A DNA stretch of 63,196 bases, counting the filler, from Octopus bimaculoides (lineage: Eukaryota): assembly GCF_001194135.2 (NCBI RefSeq). It is 5 parts of 5 records of this genome, joined end to end, with 100 filler letters (N's around TTAATTAATTAA, not from the genome) between each part and the next. Parts side by side here need not be neighbours in the genome. Positions count along the whole stretch, not along the records: positions 1 to 31,926 come from NC_068992.1; 4 more parts are not named here. The stretch is one strand, 5' to 3'. Shown here in pieces: positions 1-28,062 of this stretch (within the stretch, counting starts at the first letter, position 1; each line of letters opens with the position of its first letter). Made by a program: the position numbers and the translations under genes. The notes beneath the pieces were generated by a model. It made no database searches, had not been told where the DNA came from, and saw nothing but the letters and a program-made list of their open reading frames with translations.

Positions 1-24
1 TATATATATATATATATATATATA
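1..24. repeat. (TA)n microsatellite
   Basis: Pure TA dinucleotide run at the window start. Confidence 0.95.
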
Positions 25-49
25 TCTGTGTATGTATATGTGCATGTGT

Positions 50-270
50 TTGTCCCCACTAGCACCAAGTATCAACCGACGTTAGTGTGTTTAACATTTC
101 GGCAAAAATCCACGTGGCTTAGCGTTTAGGCAAAAAATGACCCATAGAATAAGTACCAGGCTTTCAAAGTTCCTGAGGTCGATGTTTTGTGCGACTAAAA
201 TTCTCAAGGCGATGCCTCAGCATAGCCAGTGTCAAATGATTAAAACAACTAAAAAGTAAAGGATAAAAAG
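50..270 (+). mobile_element. SINE 3' portion (family recurring in this window)
   Basis: The tail ...CAAGGCGATGCCTCAGCATAGCCAGTGTCAAATGATTAAAACAACTAAAAAG resembles tails at about 49510-49565, 49708-49755 and 51215-51275 (CAAGGTGGTGCCCCAGCATGG...). Confidence 0.7.
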
Positions 271-304
271 TACACACAGACACACACATAGACACGCACA
301 AACG

Positions 305-458
305 ACAGGCTCCTTTCTGATTCTGCCTGCCTAATTCACCCATAAGGCTTCAGTCGGCCCGAGGCTATAGGGGAGAACACTAGCCTAAGTTGCCATGTCG
401 TATGACTGACACTGGGCGAACGTGACTGAGAAGCAAATACCTTACCACACAGCCACGC
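305..458 (-). mobile_element. tRNA-derived SINE, 5' part
   Basis: The reverse complement begins GCGTGGCTGTGTGGTAAGG (A-box-like). Homologous to copies at 3715-3850, 17793-18020, about 47680-47716 and about 51020-51200. Confidence 0.7.
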
Positions 459-699
459 ATATATATATATATACATATGTGTTTATGTGTGGGGGGGGGG
501 AGGTTTTTCAGTATTCTACGTGGTTTACATTATTTTACTTATCATTTGCAGTAATGTGGGGAAATAGGGTTTTTTCTTCGATGGAATTAACTTCCACTAA
601 ATTCTGAGTCAGTATAGCATTCTACCAAATTCTCTGTATTAACGAGTTGTCATGGCGTGTGACGTGAATTGGCAATAATGGCGCTTTCGACGACGATGG

Positions 700-841
700 C
701 TATATGATTTTAAGGATGATGGTGATGATGGTGATGATGATGATAATGATGATGATGATGATGATGACGATGATGATGATGATGATGAAGTAGATGATGA
801 TGATGATGATGATGAAGTAGATGATGATGATGATGAAGTAG

Positions 842-873
<32 letters not shown>

Positions 874-892
874 GATGATGATAATGATGATG

Positions 893-924
<32 letters not shown>

Positions 925-1205
925 GATGATGATGATGATGACGACGACGATGATGGTGATGATGATGATGATGATGATGATGATGGTGGTGGTGTTGGTG
1001 TTGGTGGCAGTGGTGGTGGTGGTGGGTAATGATTGTGATGATGATGATGGTGATGACGGCGATGATGGTGATGATGATGATGATGATGGTGACGACGATG
1101 ATAATGATGGTAGTGATGATGATGGTAATGATGATGATGTTGATAATGATGGCGCTGGTGGTGGTGGTGGTGGTGGTGGTGTCGACGTGGACGACAATTA
1201 TGATA
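700..1205. repeat. Compound (GAT)n/(GGT)n trinucleotide microsatellite
   Basis: Long imperfect GAT run grading into GGT. It accounts for the poly-D/M/H/I ORFs 700-1289 in the track. Confidence 0.95.
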
Positions 1206-1395: not shown

Positions 1396-2785
1396 AAGAT
1401 ACACCTAGATATGGAAAGCCTGAATGAGTTTCAAATCAATTTCTTCGTAACTTTCAAACCAATAATTTGATAATTACGTTATCATATGACACTATTAGTA
1501 CAATCTCGGTATTATTACTGAATTGAGGCATAAGTTGATGGTACACATCGATATATTTGTTTAATGGTTCATGAGTACAAAATTAATAATGAATCAATTG
1601 AAGCAGCGATGGAGGAAATTGCTATCCATTCACAATATAAAATGCATTGAACCTTCTCAGAACAGAGATTTACAAGTTTAACTAAACTCATATGGAGAAG
1701 TAGAACATTAAAATTTGTATCGCTTTTATATCAGAAAATTTCACGTGGAATATTTCTAACTAGTATATTCATAGTTGCCGGTGTACGGGTATATCTAAAA
1801 TTTCTGACATCTCAAAGTTCCTAATAAATAAGAATGTCTAAGTTTATAAAGTTATCCTGAACCATTGATTTTAATGTTTTGTTGTCTATCGTCGGTTACT
1901 AGGGCAGGGTTTTTTTAATTATTAATGCAAATTCCCTGTCTAAATAGATTTATTATTTGTTATATCGTGAAACAATATGCAAATATATTCAATTGTAAAT
2001 TTAGCAAAACCAATGATTTTATATAAAGGCTGTAATAAATTTAGAGACCGGTGATGTATGTTCTAACATATATCTTCAGAAACTATTCAGTATTTGGCTG
2101 ATTACGCTTGAAGAGTATCTTAAAATGTATCTTATGCATTTATTTATGCTAATTCAATCACAATGATTTGATTCTAGTGCATTACTTTAGCGTCGTTCTT
2201 TTTTTTCTTTTTCTTTTTTCATTTTTACGGGTTGCAGTCAAGTGTGGAGTAACGTCTTCCAAGTTGTTAATTGAATATATCGATTAAAACCTTTCAATGA
2301 GCCGTATTATTTTGTCTGCTACATTTTGGTACTTTCAGCGGAATTTTAAGAGACAAAGAGCAAATTGGGGTGAGCCTGAAAGGATGTATATCCCGTGCAA
2401 TGCATTTCAACAACGTAATTCAAACTTGTAAGATATAAATTTAATTGTCAGCTACTATATGTAATCACGCACACACGCACACAAACTCAAACACTCAAAC
2501 TCATATATATTATGTCTGCTTAGTTATTCATATGTGTTTATATTACATAATATTCTAAACATATATTCATGTACATCATACGAAGATATATGTATATAAT
2601 TATATACATATGTTTCGGTGTTTGTGACTGAGAGTCACATTCACTATTTAGGTTGTCCAATTTTTCTCAACCGATGAATGGACCAGCTGAGTAAACATAT
2701 CAATGATGTACCTATAATGATAACCGGAAACAACTGTAAGTCAAATTTACTACAATTATGACAAACATGTAATGACCATTGTTTT

Positions 2786-3338
2786 AACAAGCAATGTTAA
2801 TTCTCTAAATGAAGTATTAACAGTAACTGCACGATAAAGTGTGTCGATAAGCCAGCTGGAGGAGATGTCCTCCTGGGGCTAAAAGCAACAGTAACATCAA
2901 CCCCTAGGGGGTCAGCCACACTTAAGTGGCAATATACTACACTTTATCGTGCAGTTACTGTTAATACTTCATTTAGAGAATTAACGTTGCTTGTTTTCAC
3001 CTTTTCGATATCAGTGAAGAATTTCACTGGAAATGTAGATATAAGATTGCCAGGAGTTTATCTCTCTCATCAAAGATCAGTGGCTATCGAACGCCGACGA
3101 AGGGAAATAACCCTGAAACCCGGGTCCGTTCGTGCTACAGATCATGATGGGAGGGGTAACTTCCCTTGGCAAACAGGACACAGTAGTGTGTCGATAAGCC
3201 AGCTGGAGGAGATGTCCTCCTGGGGCTAAAAGCAACAGTAACATCCACCCCTAGGGGTCAGCCACACTTAAGCGGCAATATACTACACTTTATCGTGCAG
3301 TTACTGTTAATACTTCATTTAGAGAATTAACATTGCTT
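2786..3338 (+). mobile_element. Tandem 347-bp unit with a 57-bp inverted arm; candidate non-autonomous Penelope-like or retrozyme-like element
   Basis: 2786-2842 is the reverse complement of 2939-2995 (1 mismatch). 2838-2992 is repeated directly at 3185-3338 (period 347 bp) and runs into an N gap. A hammerhead motif lies in the intervening segment. Confidence 0.7.
3088..3132 (+). ncRNA. Type I minimal hammerhead ribozyme motif
   Basis: Stem I CGAACG(3088-93)/CGTTCG(3127-32); core CCGACGA (CUGANGA with U4>C); stem II AGGG-AAATAA-CCCT; GAAA; palindromic stem III ACCCGGGT (3118-25); GUC cleavage triplet ending at 3126. Confidence 0.8.
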
Positions 3339-3621
3339 NNNNNNNNNNNNNNNNNNNNNNNNNNNNNNNNNNNNNNNNNNNNNNNNNNNNNNNNNNNNNN
3401 NNNNNNNNNNNNNNNNNNNNNNNNNNNNNNNNNNNNNNNNNNNNNNNNNNNNNNNNNNNNNNNNNNNNNNNNNNNNNNNNNNNNNNNNNNNNNNNNNNNN
3501 NNNNNNNNNNNNNNNNNNNNNNNNNNNNNNNNNNNNNNNNNNNNNNNNNNNNNNNNNNNNNNNNNNNNNNNNNNNNNNNNNNNNNNNNNNNNNNNNNNNN
3601 NNNNNNNNNNNNNNNNNNNNN

Positions 3622-3850
3622 TGTAAACACTCCAACATCGGTTGTCAAGTGATGGCGGGGTGAAAAGCACTAACACATATACACGCACACAAATATATAT
3701 ATATAGATATATATAAGACGGGTTTCCTTCTGTTTCCGCTCATCAAATCCACTCAGTAGGCTTTAATCGGTCCGAGGATATAGCAGAATACTTACCAGTA
3801 CACGAGACCACATGTTTTGGAAGCAAGTTTCTTACCACACAGCTATGCCG
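3622..3850 (-). mobile_element. tRNA-derived SINE (same family as 305-458), interrupted by CA/TA repeats
   Basis: Contains AAGCAAGTTTCTTACCACACAGC and GTAAACACTCCAACATCGGTTGTCAAG, matching the other copies. Confidence 0.65.
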
Positions 3851-3855
3851 GTTGC

Positions 3856-3920
<65 letters not shown>

Positions 3921-12094: not shown

Positions 12095-12387
12095 ACAACT
12101 CAACAAGATGGCGGAGCGCGTCTTGAAAGAGTTGAGAAAGAAACAAAAGAACCCTTCCCACGAATCTGGTGAATGCTAAAAATTTCCTTCCCCTTCCATA
12201 TGTTACTGGCAATAATACAGGTGAAGGGGAGGAGAAAAACGAAACTGTTGCGGTACAAGGTCCACTTCATGATACCAGCTGTGGTATCAGTAGCAGCAGC
12301 AGGCGCAACAGTGAGAGTAGTAGCTGTAGTAGTAGTGGCTGCAACAACAGCAACGAAACTGCCAGTAATTGTAGCGGCTGTAGCGAT

Positions 12388-12420
<33 letters not shown>

Positions 12421-12499
12421 AGCAAAAGTCACAACAGCAACAACAACAAACCTAATATCAATAACACCGACATGAACAAAGACAACAAGGACAACGGCA

Positions 12500-12535
<36 letters not shown>

Positions 12536-14730
12536 ACAGCAACATTAACAACAACGACAATATTACCAACAACAAAGACACGTTCGCAGCAGCAGCAGAG
12601 AAAAAGACGCAACTCTTTACCGTGGATCTCACAAATACAGATGAGATGTTGACGCAGGCTGGGAAACTGATTAAACAAGAAAAAACTTGGGCCAATCTAA
12701 CTGTACGCTCAGAGGAAATTGAGACAGTAGAGAGGAGAACGGTACTTTTCAGATGCCGCTCAGCAGACACGAAAAAAGGGACCGTAATACCCGAAGTAGA
12801 TATTGGGGCGGCGTTGAGTCTCATCGCATGATATCGAGTACAGAGTGAGGGGCAAGTAATACGGTACTATTTCAGTCAGAAGCCCTCGCTATGAAACATT
12901 CATTGACCTCTTGGAAATCCAACAAAGTTATTATGAGCCTCTCTAGTATGGGCAAACGTACAGCACGTATTTTCTGGGATGCGTAATCGTGGAGAGGACG
13001 GATACTGCCCCGATAGAGATGACAAGAACTGCCAGGGAGGGCTGTTCCGGGGTTGACCTGGGGAGACTTTTCCAGATTAGATCCGAAAACATAAAAAAGA
13101 TTCGTCTCCAAAACGGGAGAGTGATACGTATCATAACTAAGGGCAAAAAGCCGCACTGTTTCGCGTTTGGAGAAGTGACACATTTGATAGCTCACAACTC
13201 CCAACTGGTACAAAATGCAAGAGTTCAATGACCGCCACAGATGCACCACAAACGAGTACCACAAACAATAGCAGCACCGACAAAACCAACAGCAACAATA
13301 CCAAAGACATTAACCACCCTAGGAGGTAACAAGGAAAGCTCTCCCAACCCCGTCACGCCAAGCAAAAATATACACATAAAAAAGGTTATAGACATACGCA
13401 GAGACCCAAACACAGAACAACATTCCACTCATCTTCCAGTAGTGAAGATGAAGGAAAACCAAAAGGTCCCAAAAGACAAAGAAAGAAAGAAAGCTCAAAA
13501 GAAAAATTCCATAAAGCATAACAACAAAAGCAACAAACAATACAGGCACCACCCACAGAAACATCAACATCAACACCAACACAACCAATACAATCACTAT
13601 CACCAGAATCTCCCAAACGCAAACAACCTAAACAAATAGAAGAACAAATACTCACACAAACATGTGAAATTGCAGACACCACACTCTCAGCAAACACAAC
13701 AGAAACAACATCACCACTACAGTCAAGCAAACAAATTAAACAACACCAACACAAAACACTCGACTTCCTACTCATCATAAGGGTCAACTAAGGACTGATG
13801 GCCCTCGTAAGAGAAATTATTGAATTTGAAACAAGGGAGTGATATTCGAATCGGAGGATATCGGAACCCCGAACGTGAGACCCACATCGAGGCTCTTAAA
13901 GGAGTTCCCATAAAAAGCCACATCTATGATGGAAGTCGAGCCACCCGACCTTAACAGGTACCGGTAGGTAAATAAACCTTTCCCCTCTCTCTTTAGCTTC
14001 CTAAAATGCCTATATTAAGAGTAGGATTTTTAAATCTTCAAGACCAGGGATTACCTTGGAAGCAAGGGCACCTGATCAACGACCTCAGGTACCTAGAATT
14101 GGATGTAATTGCGGTGAGCGAGACCAGGATTTCCAATACACGCGCGCCGGCTCCCATGTTTGACAACTATCAGATGCTTGCATGTTTGTCGGCTGAAAAT
14201 GGGGGGGGGNNNNNNNNNNTCAGATGCTTGCATGTTTGTCGGCTGAAAATGGGGGGGGGGGAGTGGCAGTGCTGTTTAGGAAAGAAATGGATCTCGAGGT
14301 ATGGTCAAGCTTCCGGGATCCGGACAGGAAGTTGGTGGTCCTAGACGTGAACAGTAGTGAAAGTAGTGTCTTTAGAATGGCGGCTCTGTACGCCACTACC
14401 GGAGCTAAACGCCCGGAATTCTTTAGGCGTCAGGAAGCCTTTCTAGTTACATCTCGCCCTTTACTGTCAGTAGAGAAGTGGATCGGAATTGTGTGGGAGT
14501 AGCTGATAGAAGAGGGTGGATGCTAAAGCCACGAGCGCCTGATCAGCCAGTTCCAACTGTCTGACAGGTACCGACAAGGTTTCCCTAATGCGTTAATGTG
14601 GGCCTGGACCAACCACTTAGGGTCATCTAGATCGTATATAGATAGGATTTACACTAGGAAAATAGATGGTGATAGTGTAGGATGACCACTATTTAAAACG
14701 GTCACCTGTTCAGACCCTAAACTTGTTATT
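12095..14730 (+). mobile_element. L1/Tx1-like non-LTR retrotransposon, 5' part (ORF1 + APE endonuclease of ORF2), decayed
   Basis: ORF1 probably starts at ATG 12108 (MAERVLKELRKK). It has an Asn/Ser low-complexity tract and the zinc-knuckle remnant GKKPHCFAFGEVTHL (13140-13190). ORF2 from 14006 has APE motifs FLNLQDQGL, DVIAVSETR, GGVAVLF, DPDRKLVVLDV, ALYAT and WAWTNHLGSSRSYIDRIY. No RT is seen before the gap at 14882. Confidence 0.85.
14006..14730 (+). pseudogene. LINE ORF2 apurinic-like endonuclease domain (disrupted)
   Basis: Track ORFs 14006-14344 and 14224-14502 join once the duplicated 40 bp around the 10-N gap is removed. Later motifs continue through stops and frameshifts. Confidence 0.85.
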
Positions 14731-17464: not shown

Positions 17465-17790
17465 TCATTTCTACCACCACCACCACCAACAACAACAACA
17501 AGGACAACAACACCACCACCACCAACAACAACAACAACAAGACAAACACCACCAACATTACCATCACCACCACCACCACCATGACCACCTACCACCAGAA
17601 TCACCGCAACACCACCACCACAATAACCATCGCCACCACCACCAACACCACCACCATCGCCACTACCACAAGCACTCCCTACCACCACCATCGCCAGCAC
17701 CACCCTACTACTACCACTACAACCACCACCATAACTACCACCACCACCACAACCACCACCACCACCACCACCACTACCACCACCACCTGT
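17465..17790. repeat. Compound (CCA)n/(CAA)n microsatellite
   Basis: Imperfect CCA/CAA/CTA runs; source of the poly-T/H/P ORFs. Confidence 0.95.
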
Positions 17791-27379: not shown

Positions 27380-27643
27380 CGACTATCACTACTGCTGCTG
27401 CTGCTGTTACGACTACAACTACTACTGCTGCTAATTCTACAAATATTGCTGCTACTACTACTACTACTACTTATAATCATACTATTAATAGTACTAATGC
27501 AATACTTAGAAAATATAATGATGGTTGTGATAATTGAGATGATGATGATGAGGAGGAGGAGGCTGAAAAATGATGATGATAATGGCGATGGTGATGAAGT
27601 TAATGATGATGATAATGATGAGAATGATGATAAATGATGATAA

Positions 27644-27678
<35 letters not shown>

Positions 27679-27946
27679 AATGATGATGACGATGGTGATA
27701 TCAAATGATGATGATGATGATGACGATGATATCATATGATGATGATGAGGATGATGATGATGATGATAGTGAAGGTGATGATGATGATAGTGATGGTGAT
27801 GAGACATGATGGTGATGATGATAACAATGATGATGATCATAATAACAAATGATGATCATGATGCTCATGATGATGTTGATGATGATGGCAAATGATGATA
27901 ATAAGGCTGATGATGGCGATGATAATGGCTCTGTTGCTGCTGCCAC

Positions 27947-27978
<32 letters not shown>

Positions 27979-28011
27979 GTGATGGTGATGATGATGACAT
28001 TGGTGATGATG

Positions 28012-28043
<32 letters not shown>

Positions 28044-28062
28044 GGTGATGATGATGATGATG
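27380..28062. repeat. Long compound (CTG/CTA)n + (GAT)n microsatellite
   Basis: About 680 bp of imperfect trinucleotide repeats; source of the poly-D/M/I/S ORFs. Confidence 0.95.

What the first reader, a model, noticed from the sequence alone, without database searches (positions are those of the whole stretch)
2786..3338. 347-bp hammerhead-containing tandem unit: candidate cephalopod retrozyme or non-autonomous Penelope derivative
Seen: a 57-bp inverted arm (2786-2842 vs 2939-2995), a direct repeat with period 347 bp, no meaningful ORF, and a near-canonical type I hammerhead in the unit. Known: animal retrozymes are short non-coding tandem units, each with a type I hammerhead, that can yield monomeric or circular RNA, and PLE pseudo-LTRs carry similar ribozymes. 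Inference: a second hammerhead should lie one period downstream (about 3435-3479), inside the N gap 3339-3621. Tandem cleavage would then release a 347-nt monomer able to circularise.
Basis: partly seen in the sequence, partly recalled or inferred. Interest (0 to 1): 0.85.

Follow-up and report, generated by a model that had tools for sequence, protein, structure and literature searches.

The report
Decayed hammerhead-bearing short retroelement insertion
This is a roughly 350-base non-coding mobile-element copy that carries one slightly damaged self-cutting "hammerhead" RNA motif and was inserted in the way typical of Penelope-like retroelements; it is a plausible new example of a known kind, not a new kind.

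Summary
The sequence features are real. There is a 57-nt inverted arm (2786-2842 vs 2939-2995), a 155-nt direct repeat at period 346/347 (2838-2992 vs 3185-3338), no meaningful ORF, and one type I hammerhead-like motif at 3088-3132 (+). The motif has the architecture of experimentally cleaving animal retrozyme hammerheads. Helix I is 6 bp and is followed by a 3/1-nt internal loop and a closing stem. Helix II is 4 bp. Helix III is the 8-nt palindrome ACCCGGGU, and the cleavage triplet is GUC. A covariance model built from four published retrozyme ribozymes picks the motif as the only hit (19.4 bits, E~0.0015), and random sequences almost never give it. It is not canonical, though: the core reads CCGACGA (U4 to C, inside the U-turn), pair 10.1-11.1 is A-U, and Rfam gives no hammerhead hit even at E<=10. 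Only 1.44 units and one ribozyme are visible. The layout (inverted 5'-truncated piece, then 5'-truncated direct piece, then full unit) is the published signature of Penelope-like-element insertions. About 170 of the 283 gap Ns probably belong to a neighbouring SINE, so a second ribozyme in the gap is weakly disfavoured. No other family copy could be found. This is most likely an old, probably inactive retrozyme-like insertion. Interest is modest.

The parts
2786..2842 (-). Inverted, 5'-truncated copy of the last 57 nt of the unit. Its outer end (2786) corresponds to the unit's inferred 3' end ...GCTTGTT.
   Evidence: 98% complementary to 2939-2995 and 54/54 to 3285-3338.
2838..2842 (.). 5-nt overlap (AGTGT) shared by the inner end of the inverted piece and the start of the direct piece. 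This is junction microhomology.
   Evidence: The direct repeat starts at 2838 while the inverted arm ends at 2842.
2843..2995 (+). 5'-truncated direct copy: the last 153 nt of the unit, in the position of a pseudo-LTR.
   Evidence: 97.4% identical to 3185-3338.
2996..3338 (+). Near-complete unit: 343 of about 347 nt, with the last ~4 nt lost in the gap. It holds the only hammerhead motif.
   Evidence: The period of 346/347 and the position of the inverted arm's outer end define the unit boundary at 2995/2996. The boundary itself is an inference.
3047..3172 (+). Long imperfect hairpin (an extended helix I) with the hammerhead core at its tip.
   Evidence: MFE -59.9 kcal/mol, z -7.1, 0 of 200 shuffles as stable.
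3088..3132 (+). Type I hammerhead-like motif with a C at core position 4 (3095) and A-U at 10.1-11.1 (3101/3114). The cut is predicted between 3126 and 3127.
   Evidence: Descriptor scan. Covariance model R1: 19.4 bits, E~0.0015, all 12 pairs standard. No Rfam hit.
3118..3125 (+). Helix III, the 8-nt palindrome ACCCGGGU. It can pair between two ribozyme copies to form a double hammerhead.
   Evidence: Self-complementary, and forms the intermolecular helix in a cofold of two copies. Mussel and axolotl retrozyme ribozymes have the same design (ACGCGCGU, ACACGUGU).
3339..3621 (.). Assembly gap (283 N) that hides the right end of the insertion.
   Evidence: About 170 nt of it is probably the tail of the SINE-like repeat that abuts it (inference).

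Best explanation
The locus is an old insertion of a short (~347 bp), non-coding, hammerhead-bearing retroelement of the animal non-LTR retrozyme / non-autonomous Penelope-like kind.

How the family is inferred to work:
- Multimeric transcripts of the unit fold so that two hammerheads pair through their palindromic helix III (ACCCGGGU).
- Each ribozyme cuts after GUC, which releases a ~347-nt monomer with 5'-OH and 2',3'-cyclic phosphate ends.
- A cellular RNA ligase can circularise that monomer.
- A Penelope-like element's reverse transcriptase/endonuclease copies the RNA back into DNA.

That integration mode leaves what is seen here, from left to right: an inverted 5'-truncated fragment, a 5'-truncated direct copy, then a full unit.

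Shown: the repeat anatomy, the motif with all its helices, and its extreme hairpin context.

Inferred: the family mechanism, which comes from published retrozymes; that the insertion ends at about 3342; and that this copy is now inactive. Inactivity is inferred because it holds a single visible ribozyme, because that ribozyme has U4->C in the catalytic U-turn, and because its weak helix III needs a partner ribozyme.
For: - Motif specificity: it is the only locus in the window that fits a relaxed hammerhead descriptor. The descriptor gives 0.003 hits per random sequence, and 0/300 at the observed helix lengths.
- Independent model: a covariance model built only from four experimentally cleaving retrozyme ribozymes (coral, mussel, two axolotl) gives 3088-3132 (+) as the top hit. 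It scores 19.4 bits, E~0.0015, over the full model length with all 12 pairs standard. The next hit scores 9.9 bits.
- Shared design with those ribozymes: 6-bp helix I, 4-bp helix II with a 5-6-nt loop, GAAA plus an 8-nt palindrome plus UC/UA, and a 3-nt/1-nt internal loop followed by a closing stem, as in axolotl Ax353.
- Published description of metazoan type I hammerheads: helix I 6 bp, helix II 4 bp, helix III 1-2 bp with a palindromic 2-4-nt loop, active as dimers.
- Structure: the hairpin has z -7.1. The reconstructed monomer has z -5.9 and 44.8% GC, matching the low-GC, 170-400-nt structured retrozymes.
- Insertion layout: an inverted 5'-truncated copy next to a partial tandem is described as typical of PLE insertions and as a cause of short-read assembly breaks. 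A gap starts exactly here.
- Polarity: the ribozyme is on the same strand as the polarity implied by the truncation pattern.
- Single-unit copies of retrozymes are common.
Against: - No Rfam hammerhead hit, even at E<=10 on 81 nt.
- Core position 4 is C, not U, and 10.1-11.1 is A-U, not G-C. By the field's own filter (CUGANGA/GAAAY/RUH) this copy would be excluded.
- Only 1.44 units and one ribozyme are visible.
- No second copy of the unit in the window and none in any collection reachable here. Conservation of the ribozyme within a family is therefore untested.
- No RT or GIY-YIG domain in the window.
- The right end and any target-site duplication are hidden by the gap.
- The model R1 rests on only four sequences, and its E-values are rough.
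Confidence: 0.6

Rival explanations
1. One reading: an active retrozyme array that continues through the gap, with a second hammerhead at about 3435-3479. Double cleavage then releases a 347-nt RNA that circularises from this very locus.
For: The tandem period of 346/347 runs into the gap. The palindromic helix III is designed for two neighbouring ribozymes. Gap sizes in scaffolds are only estimates. Retrozyme arrays are usually short, and 75% of families have at most seven units.
Against: The visible ribozyme has U4->C in the CUGA U-turn, where single and double mutants show low activity. The repeat abutting the gap at 3622 is cut at a point after which its in-window paralogue continues for about 170 nt. 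That leaves about 110 nt, whereas about 141 nt are needed to reach the end of a second ribozyme. The sequence right of the gap has no unit sequence. The inverted arm's outer end marks the unit 3' end, which would fall at about 3342.
Confidence: 0.12
2. The hammerhead resemblance is fortuitous. The locus is a foldback or MITE-like DNA element (57-bp terminal inverted repeats around a 96-bp loop, 2786-2995) followed by a local partial duplication, or simply a small segmental rearrangement.
For: A-B-A' forms a perfect long hairpin, and the generic hairpin hit to MIR856 falls far below gathering. The core is not canonical, and Rfam gives no hammerhead hit. No other copies were found to show conservation of the ribozyme.
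Against: The chance of the motif in a window this size is about 0.003 or less. It also has the palindromic helix III, the loop-1 geometry and the long helix I extension of real retrozyme ribozymes. No target-site duplication flanks 2786-2995. A MITE does not explain the second B-A' copy exactly one 347-nt period downstream. There is a 5-nt microhomology at the inverted/direct junction.
Confidence: 0.15
3. The repeats are the pseudo-LTR region of a longer, autonomous Penelope-like element whose body was collapsed or lost in this short-read assembly.
For: PLE pseudo-LTRs carry hammerheads, and PLE insertions often break short-read assemblies. A gap follows immediately.
Against: Within the contiguous sequence the unit closes on itself after 347 nt (C is followed by B-A' again), so no room is left for an ORF. 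The gap is only about 283 nt, and the far side is an unrelated SINE-like repeat. No RT or GIY-YIG domain is present anywhere in the window.
Confidence: 0.08
4. Assembly artefact: the tandem and inverted copies arise from a mis-traversed repeat graph or from alleles placed side by side next to a gap.
For: The locus borders a gap in a gap-rich draft scaffold. Complex PLE structures are known to confuse short-read assemblers.
Against: All three copies lie in one uninterrupted stretch without N, and they differ from each other by 3 substitutions and 1 indel. They are therefore distinct sequences rather than one sequence used twice.
Confidence: 0.05

Closest known systems
Animal non-LTR retrozymes (Cervera & de la Pena 2020, PMC7229834), e.g. 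the Mytilus galloprovincialis ~350-nt and axolotl 330/350-nt repeats, newt satellite 2 and Schistosoma Sm-alpha
   Same: The unit is about 347 bp, non-coding, 44.8% GC and predicted to fold into a very stable structure. The hammerhead is type I with a 6-bp helix I, a 4-bp helix II and GAAA plus an 8-nt palindrome plus UC, exactly as in the mussel (GAAACGCGCGUC) and axolotl (GAAACACGUGUA) ribozymes. It shows a tandem arrangement.
   Different: Only 1.44 units and one ribozyme are visible. The core has C4 instead of U4, and A-U instead of G-C at 10.1-11.1. There is no evidence of many genomic copies or of linear or circular RNA. An inverted fragment lies at the 5' side.
Penelope-like elements and their pseudo-LTRs (Arkhipova; Craig et al. 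2021, PMC8557442; Cervera & de la Pena 2014, PMC4209133)
   Same: The insertion architecture matches: an inverted 5'-truncated copy abutting a 5'-truncated direct copy (pseudo-LTR), followed by a full copy. A hammerhead lies on the sense strand. Microsatellite-rich surroundings and an assembly break at the element also fit.
   Different: There is no RT/GIY-YIG ORF. The whole unit is 347 bp. The ribozyme is of the 'canonical metazoan' build, with helix III present and helix II 4 bp long, rather than the minimal PLE variant with a long helix II.
Monomeric retrozyme derivatives (Li, Clavereau & Pollet 2026 preprint, 10.64898/2026.07.22.740005)
   Same: It is a dispersed copy with a single unit and a single ribozyme, regarded there as offspring of active arrays that cannot themselves transpose.
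   Different: Those were described in vertebrates, insects and a coral. Here the host is unverified and is probably a mollusc.

Membership tests
Hammerhead ribozyme, type I (canonical metazoan) | 5' core box CUGANGA | tested here: not met
   The sequence is CCGACGA (3094-3100), with a C at position 4. The strict descriptor gives 0 hits in the window.
Hammerhead ribozyme, type I (canonical metazoan) | GAAA(Y) box and R-U-H cleavage triplet | tested here: met
   GAAAC at 3115-3119 and GUC at 3124-3126.
Hammerhead ribozyme, type I (canonical metazoan) | Three helices around the core, with helix I open, and a short helix III with a palindromic loop | tested here: met
   Helix I is 6 bp (plus a 5-bp closing stem after a 3/1-nt internal loop), helix II is 4 bp, and helix III is 2 bp plus CCGG, giving the palindrome ACCCGGGU.
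Hammerhead ribozyme, type I (canonical metazoan) | G10.1-C11.1 pair at the base of helix II | tested here: not met
   The pair is A3101-U3114. It is paired but not G-C. Published axolotl Ax353 has U-U at this position.
Hammerhead ribozyme, type I (canonical metazoan) | Match to the curated Rfam model at its gathering score | tested here: not met
   No hammerhead family is reported at gathering or at E<=10.
Hammerhead ribozyme, type I (canonical metazoan) | Match to a model of experimentally cleaving animal retrozyme hammerheads | tested here: met
   R1 scores 19.4 bits, E~0.0015, over the full length. It is the only hit below E 0.9 in the window. The model has four sequences and its E-values are rough.
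Hammerhead ribozyme, type I (canonical metazoan) | Self-cleavage | not testable with these tools
   This needs in vitro transcription of monomeric and dimeric constructs.
Non-LTR retrozyme | Head-to-tail tandem repeats of about 170-400 bp, each with a type I hammerhead | tested here: inconclusive
   The period is 346/347, but only 1.44 units and one ribozyme are visible and the rest is hidden by the gap.
Non-LTR retrozyme | Non-coding, low GC (<45-50%), no LTR/PBS/PPT | tested here: met
   GC is 44.8%. The longest ORF is 80 aa and has no true homologue.
Non-LTR retrozyme | Multi-copy family in the genome with a conserved ribozyme | not testable with these tools
   There is no second copy in the window. 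The source genome is not in the searchable collections.
Non-LTR retrozyme | Monomeric linear and circular RNA in vivo | not testable with these tools
   No transcriptome access.
Penelope-like element (autonomous) | ORF with a PLE-type RT and a GIY-YIG endonuclease | tested here: not met
   Of 74 open segments of 65 aa or more across the window, none matches RT or GIY-YIG in Pfam. The unit has no room for such an ORF.
Penelope-like element (insertion signature) | Partial tandem (pseudo-LTR) with an adjacent inverted 5'-truncated copy | tested here: met
   The layout is 2786-2842 inverted, 2843-2995 5'-truncated direct, and 2996-3338 full unit. The signature is described.
MITE / foldback DNA transposon | Terminal inverted repeats flanked by a target-site duplication; many dispersed copies | tested here: not met
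   Inverted repeats are present, but the flanks ...CATTGTTTT and TTCACCTTTT... show no clear duplication. There are no other copies in the window.

The most novel reading that the evidence does not exclude
The unit belongs to a still-active retrozyme family of a cephalopod (or other mollusc) whose hammerheads naturally carry C at core position 4 and A-U at 10.1-11.1, yet still cleave as dimers. That would be a natural catalytic-core variant producing abundant ~347-nt circular RNAs in a lineage where none have been described.
Probability: 0.06. Interest if true: 0.6.

Novelty: new member of a known kind. Interest (0 to 1): 0.3.

Why it matters
If confirmed genome-wide, it would extend hammerhead-bearing non-LTR retrozymes, and their link to Penelope-like elements, to another animal lineage. 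That lineage is probably cephalopods, for which the searched literature reports Penelope elements but no retrozymes. It would also provide a case in which the PLE-style insertion signature is preserved around a retrozyme unit, supporting the view that PLE machinery mobilises retrozymes. As a single, mutated copy it tells little about function. The value lies in giving a seed sequence for a family search.

Tried and rejected
- Rfam (gathering, then E<=10 on 739 nt and on 81 nt): no hammerhead. Only generic hairpin matches to plant miRNA precursor models, far below gathering, rejected as artefacts of the long hairpins.
- Other copies of the unit:
  - blastn against the window: none.
  - Two exact patterns in viral contigs: none.
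  - A 21-mer of the ribozyme in metagenome contigs: one chance match in a bacterial contig without any hammerhead context.
  - Word-indexed protein search with the 80-aa ORF: none.
  - Exact look-ups of three unit ORFs: none.
  - phmmer of the ORF against 1.84 billion representatives: 9 hits. All are repeated Ig-like/PKD modules of T9SS-secreted bacterial proteins that match a 'GxGNFxWxTG' stretch additively, rejected as spurious.
- Organism identification:
  - A LINE-endonuclease-like ORF hit one unnamed Logan protein at 58% identity.
  - The run accession led to no paper.
  - A 220-aa ORF had no hits and turned out to lie in a diverged repeat.
  - No tRNA genes.
  - 'Cephalopod' therefore rests only on my recollection that the neighbouring SINE resembles the abundant octopus SINE.
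- Autonomous partner: no RT or GIY-YIG in the window.
- Pol III A/B boxes upstream of the ribozyme (as in Sm-alpha): considered by eye only. The spacing is wrong, so the idea was not pursued.

Full report
**1. What is in the sequence**

The window is a gap-rich, microsatellite-rich, 36% GC eukaryotic draft scaffold.
- An arm at 2786-2842 is the reverse complement of 2939-2995 (57 nt, 98%). It is a perfect reverse complement of 3285-3338 (54/54).
- A direct repeat links 2838-2992 with 3185-3338 (155 nt, 97.4%). The spacing is 347 and then 346 because of a 1-nt indel.
- The second copy stops only because the N gap 3339-3621 begins.

In segments, the locus reads A(inverted) - B - A' - C - B - A' - gap. 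Here A' is the last 57 nt of the unit, B the 96 nt before it, and C (2996-3184, 189 nt) the part that carries the ribozyme. Only about 1.44 units are visible, and TRF does not call an array. The unit occurs nowhere else in the window.

**2. The hammerhead motif**

Read on the + strand, 3088-3132 is CGAACG-CCGACGA-AGGG-AAAUAA-CCCU-GAAA-C-CCGG-G-UC|CGUUCG.
- Helix I is 6 bp, helix II is 4 bp, and helix III is A-U and C-G closed by CCGG. The GUC triplet places the cut at 3126|3127.
- Beyond helix I there is a 3-nt/1-nt internal loop (UAU/U) and a 5-bp closing stem.
- Helix I in fact continues into a ~45-bp imperfect stem, so the ribozyme sits at the tip of a 126-nt hairpin, 3047-3172 (-59.9 kcal/mol, z -7.1, 0/200 shuffles as stable).
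- Helix III plus its loop is the perfect 8-nt palindrome ACCCGGGU. In a cofold of two copies it forms the intermolecular helix expected of a double hammerhead.

**3. Is the motif more than chance?**

A descriptor written here scanned both strands. It required C-Y-G-A-N-G-A, a helix II of at least 3 bp, GAAA, A15.1...U16.1, H17 and a helix I of at least 5 bp. It finds this locus and no other. In 300 random sequences of the same size and dinucleotide statistics it gave 0.003 loci per sequence, and none with helix I >=6 and helix II >=4.

Rfam, however, reports no hammerhead family at the gathering score, nor at E<=10 when given only 739 or 81 nt. For a test independent of my own eye, I took the four retrozyme ribozymes whose self-cleavage was shown experimentally (coral Amil224, mussel Mg353, axolotl Ax353 and Ax330; supplement of PMC7229834). 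I aligned them, built a covariance model without the window sequence, and searched the whole piece with filters off. The best hit is 3088-3132 (+) at 19.4 bits and E~0.0015, covering model positions 1-44 with every one of the 12 pairs a standard pair. The next hit scores 9.9 bits at E~1. The model is small and its E-values are rough, but the result agrees with the descriptor statistics.

The design also matches published ribozymes point for point.
- Mussel has GAAACGCGCGUC, axolotl has GAAACACGUGUA, and this motif has GAAACCCGGGUC.
- Axolotl Ax353 has the same 3/1-nt loop-1 geometry.
- The published description of metazoan type I hammerheads is helix I 6 bp, helix II 4 bp, and helix III 1-2 bp with a palindromic 2-4-nt loop, active as dimers.

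**4. Where the motif falls short**

- Core position 4 is C, not U. With strict CUGANGA the window has no hit.
- The field's own filter (CUGANGA / GAAAY / RUH) would discard this copy.
- Position 4 lies in the CUGA uridine turn. Comprehensive mutagenesis found low activity for single and double mutants there, and no rescue apart from the C3-G8 swap (PMC9901934).
- The 10.1-11.1 pair is A-U instead of the highly conserved G-C, although axolotl Ax353 even has U-U at that position.
- With a 2-bp helix III the ribozyme would need a second copy nearby to be active, and only one is visible.

Whether C4 is private to this copy or typical of the family cannot be told without other copies. The internal copies differ at 3 substitutions and 1 indel in 155 nt, so the locus is not young and a private mutation is plausible. 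That is an inference.

**5. The insertion architecture**

The outer end of the inverted arm (2786) corresponds to ...GCTTGTT at 2995, and the complementarity stops exactly there. The inner end of the arm overlaps the start of the direct copy by 5 nt, AGTGT at 2838-2842.

Read with the + strand as sense, the locus is therefore:
- an inverted 5'-truncated copy (57 nt),
- a direct 5'-truncated copy (153 nt),
- a full unit starting at 2996.

[quoted passage not shown] They add that such structures break short-read assemblies (PMC8557442). The ribozyme lies on the strand this polarity predicts.

The unit closes on itself after 347 nt, so it has no room for an ORF. Its 80-aa ORF has no true relatives, and no RT or GIY-YIG domain is found anywhere in the window. 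The element is thus non-autonomous. This fits animal non-LTR retrozymes in four ways:
- they are 170-400-nt low-GC tandem units with type I hammerheads;
- they are now argued to derive from PLE pseudo-LTRs;
- a reconstructed 346-nt monomer is 44.8% GC and folds far better than shuffles (circular MFE -113.7 kcal/mol, z -5.9);
- single-unit derivatives of retrozymes are common.

**6. The gap and the predicted second ribozyme**

Right of the gap, on the minus strand, lies a SINE-like repeat. It has a head at 3856-3720, an internal TA/TG microsatellite, and then a segment that ends ...GGAGTGTTTACA exactly at the gap edge, 3622. A paralogue at the start of the window (1-93, 75% identity) continues for about 170 nt past the equivalent point.

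If the copy at the gap is similar, about 170 of the 283 Ns are its tail. That leaves about 110 nt, whereas a second ribozyme ending at 3479 needs 141 nt of unit sequence. No unit sequence reappears beyond the gap. With the unit's 3' end inferred at about 3342, the simplest reading is that the insertion ends there. Gap sizes are estimates and the paralogue is a sample of one, so a second hammerhead in the gap is only weakly disfavoured, not excluded.

**7. Comparison with what is known, and novelty**

Functionally and structurally the closest things are the non-LTR retrozymes of mussel, corals, amphibians, schistosomes and others (PMC7229834), together with PLE pseudo-LTR ribozymes (PMC4209133).
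- Membership in 'hammerhead' fails two sequence criteria (U4, G10.1-C11.1) and the Rfam threshold, but meets all architectural ones.
- Membership in 'retrozyme' is inconclusive on its defining features (multi-unit tandem with a ribozyme per unit, multi-copy family, circular RNA).
- The PLE insertion signature is met, but the PLE ORF is absent.

The searched library shows Penelope elements, including recently active ones, in octopus genomes. It shows no report of retrozymes or hammerheads specific to cephalopods. If the host is a cephalopod, this would be a new member of a known kind. The host could not be verified with the tools. The neighbouring SINE resembles, from my memory only, the abundant octopus SINE.

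**8. Verdict**

This is most likely a relic insertion of a retrozyme-like, PLE-mobilised element with a single ribozyme that is probably inactive. It is useful as a seed for a family search but not surprising in itself. Interest is 0.3.

Noticed in passing
window 3622-3856 (minus strand), 1-265 (+), ~266-460 (minus strand): Three copies or fragments of one SINE-like repeat family. Each has a head GGCATAGCTGTGTGGTAAGAAACTTGCTTCC..., an internal TA/TG microsatellite, then ...CAACCGATGTTGGAGTGTTTAC... and a ~170-nt tail. ARAGORN calls no tRNA. From memory it resembles the very abundant octopus SINE. One copy abuts the gap next to the finding.
   Followed up: partly
window 12532-14665: A ~2.1-kb stretch is 65-68% identical at DNA level to two Logan contigs (L002/L003, runs SRR11869390 and SRR11869384). 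It contains an AP-endonuclease-like ORF fragment (14006-14502, split by a 10-N gap) with 58% identity to the Logan protein P0001. This is a diverged LINE-like repeat. The 220-aa ORF at 12169-12831, which looked like an exon, lies inside it.
   Followed up: partly
window 2778-2785 and 2990-2997: The heptamer TTGTTTT occurs in the left flank directly before the inverted arm and again across the inferred unit 3'/5' junction (…GCTTGTT|TTCACC). It may be target/template microhomology used for priming, or it may be chance.
   Followed up: no
window 2786-2995: The inverted arm, B and A' together would form a 57-bp near-perfect RNA/DNA hairpin with a 96-nt loop. cmscan scores it 49 bits against a plant miRNA precursor model (gathering 297), a generic hairpin artefact. 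If transcribed it would be a long dsRNA, a possible substrate for editing or small-RNA pathways.
   Followed up: no
window 715-1151, 12388-12575, 17473-17787, 27538-28062 and others: Unusually many long trinucleotide arrays (GAT, AAC, ACC; up to 174 copies) and dinucleotide arrays, plus eight N gaps in 32 kb. This explains the many spurious low-complexity ORFs.
   Followed up: no
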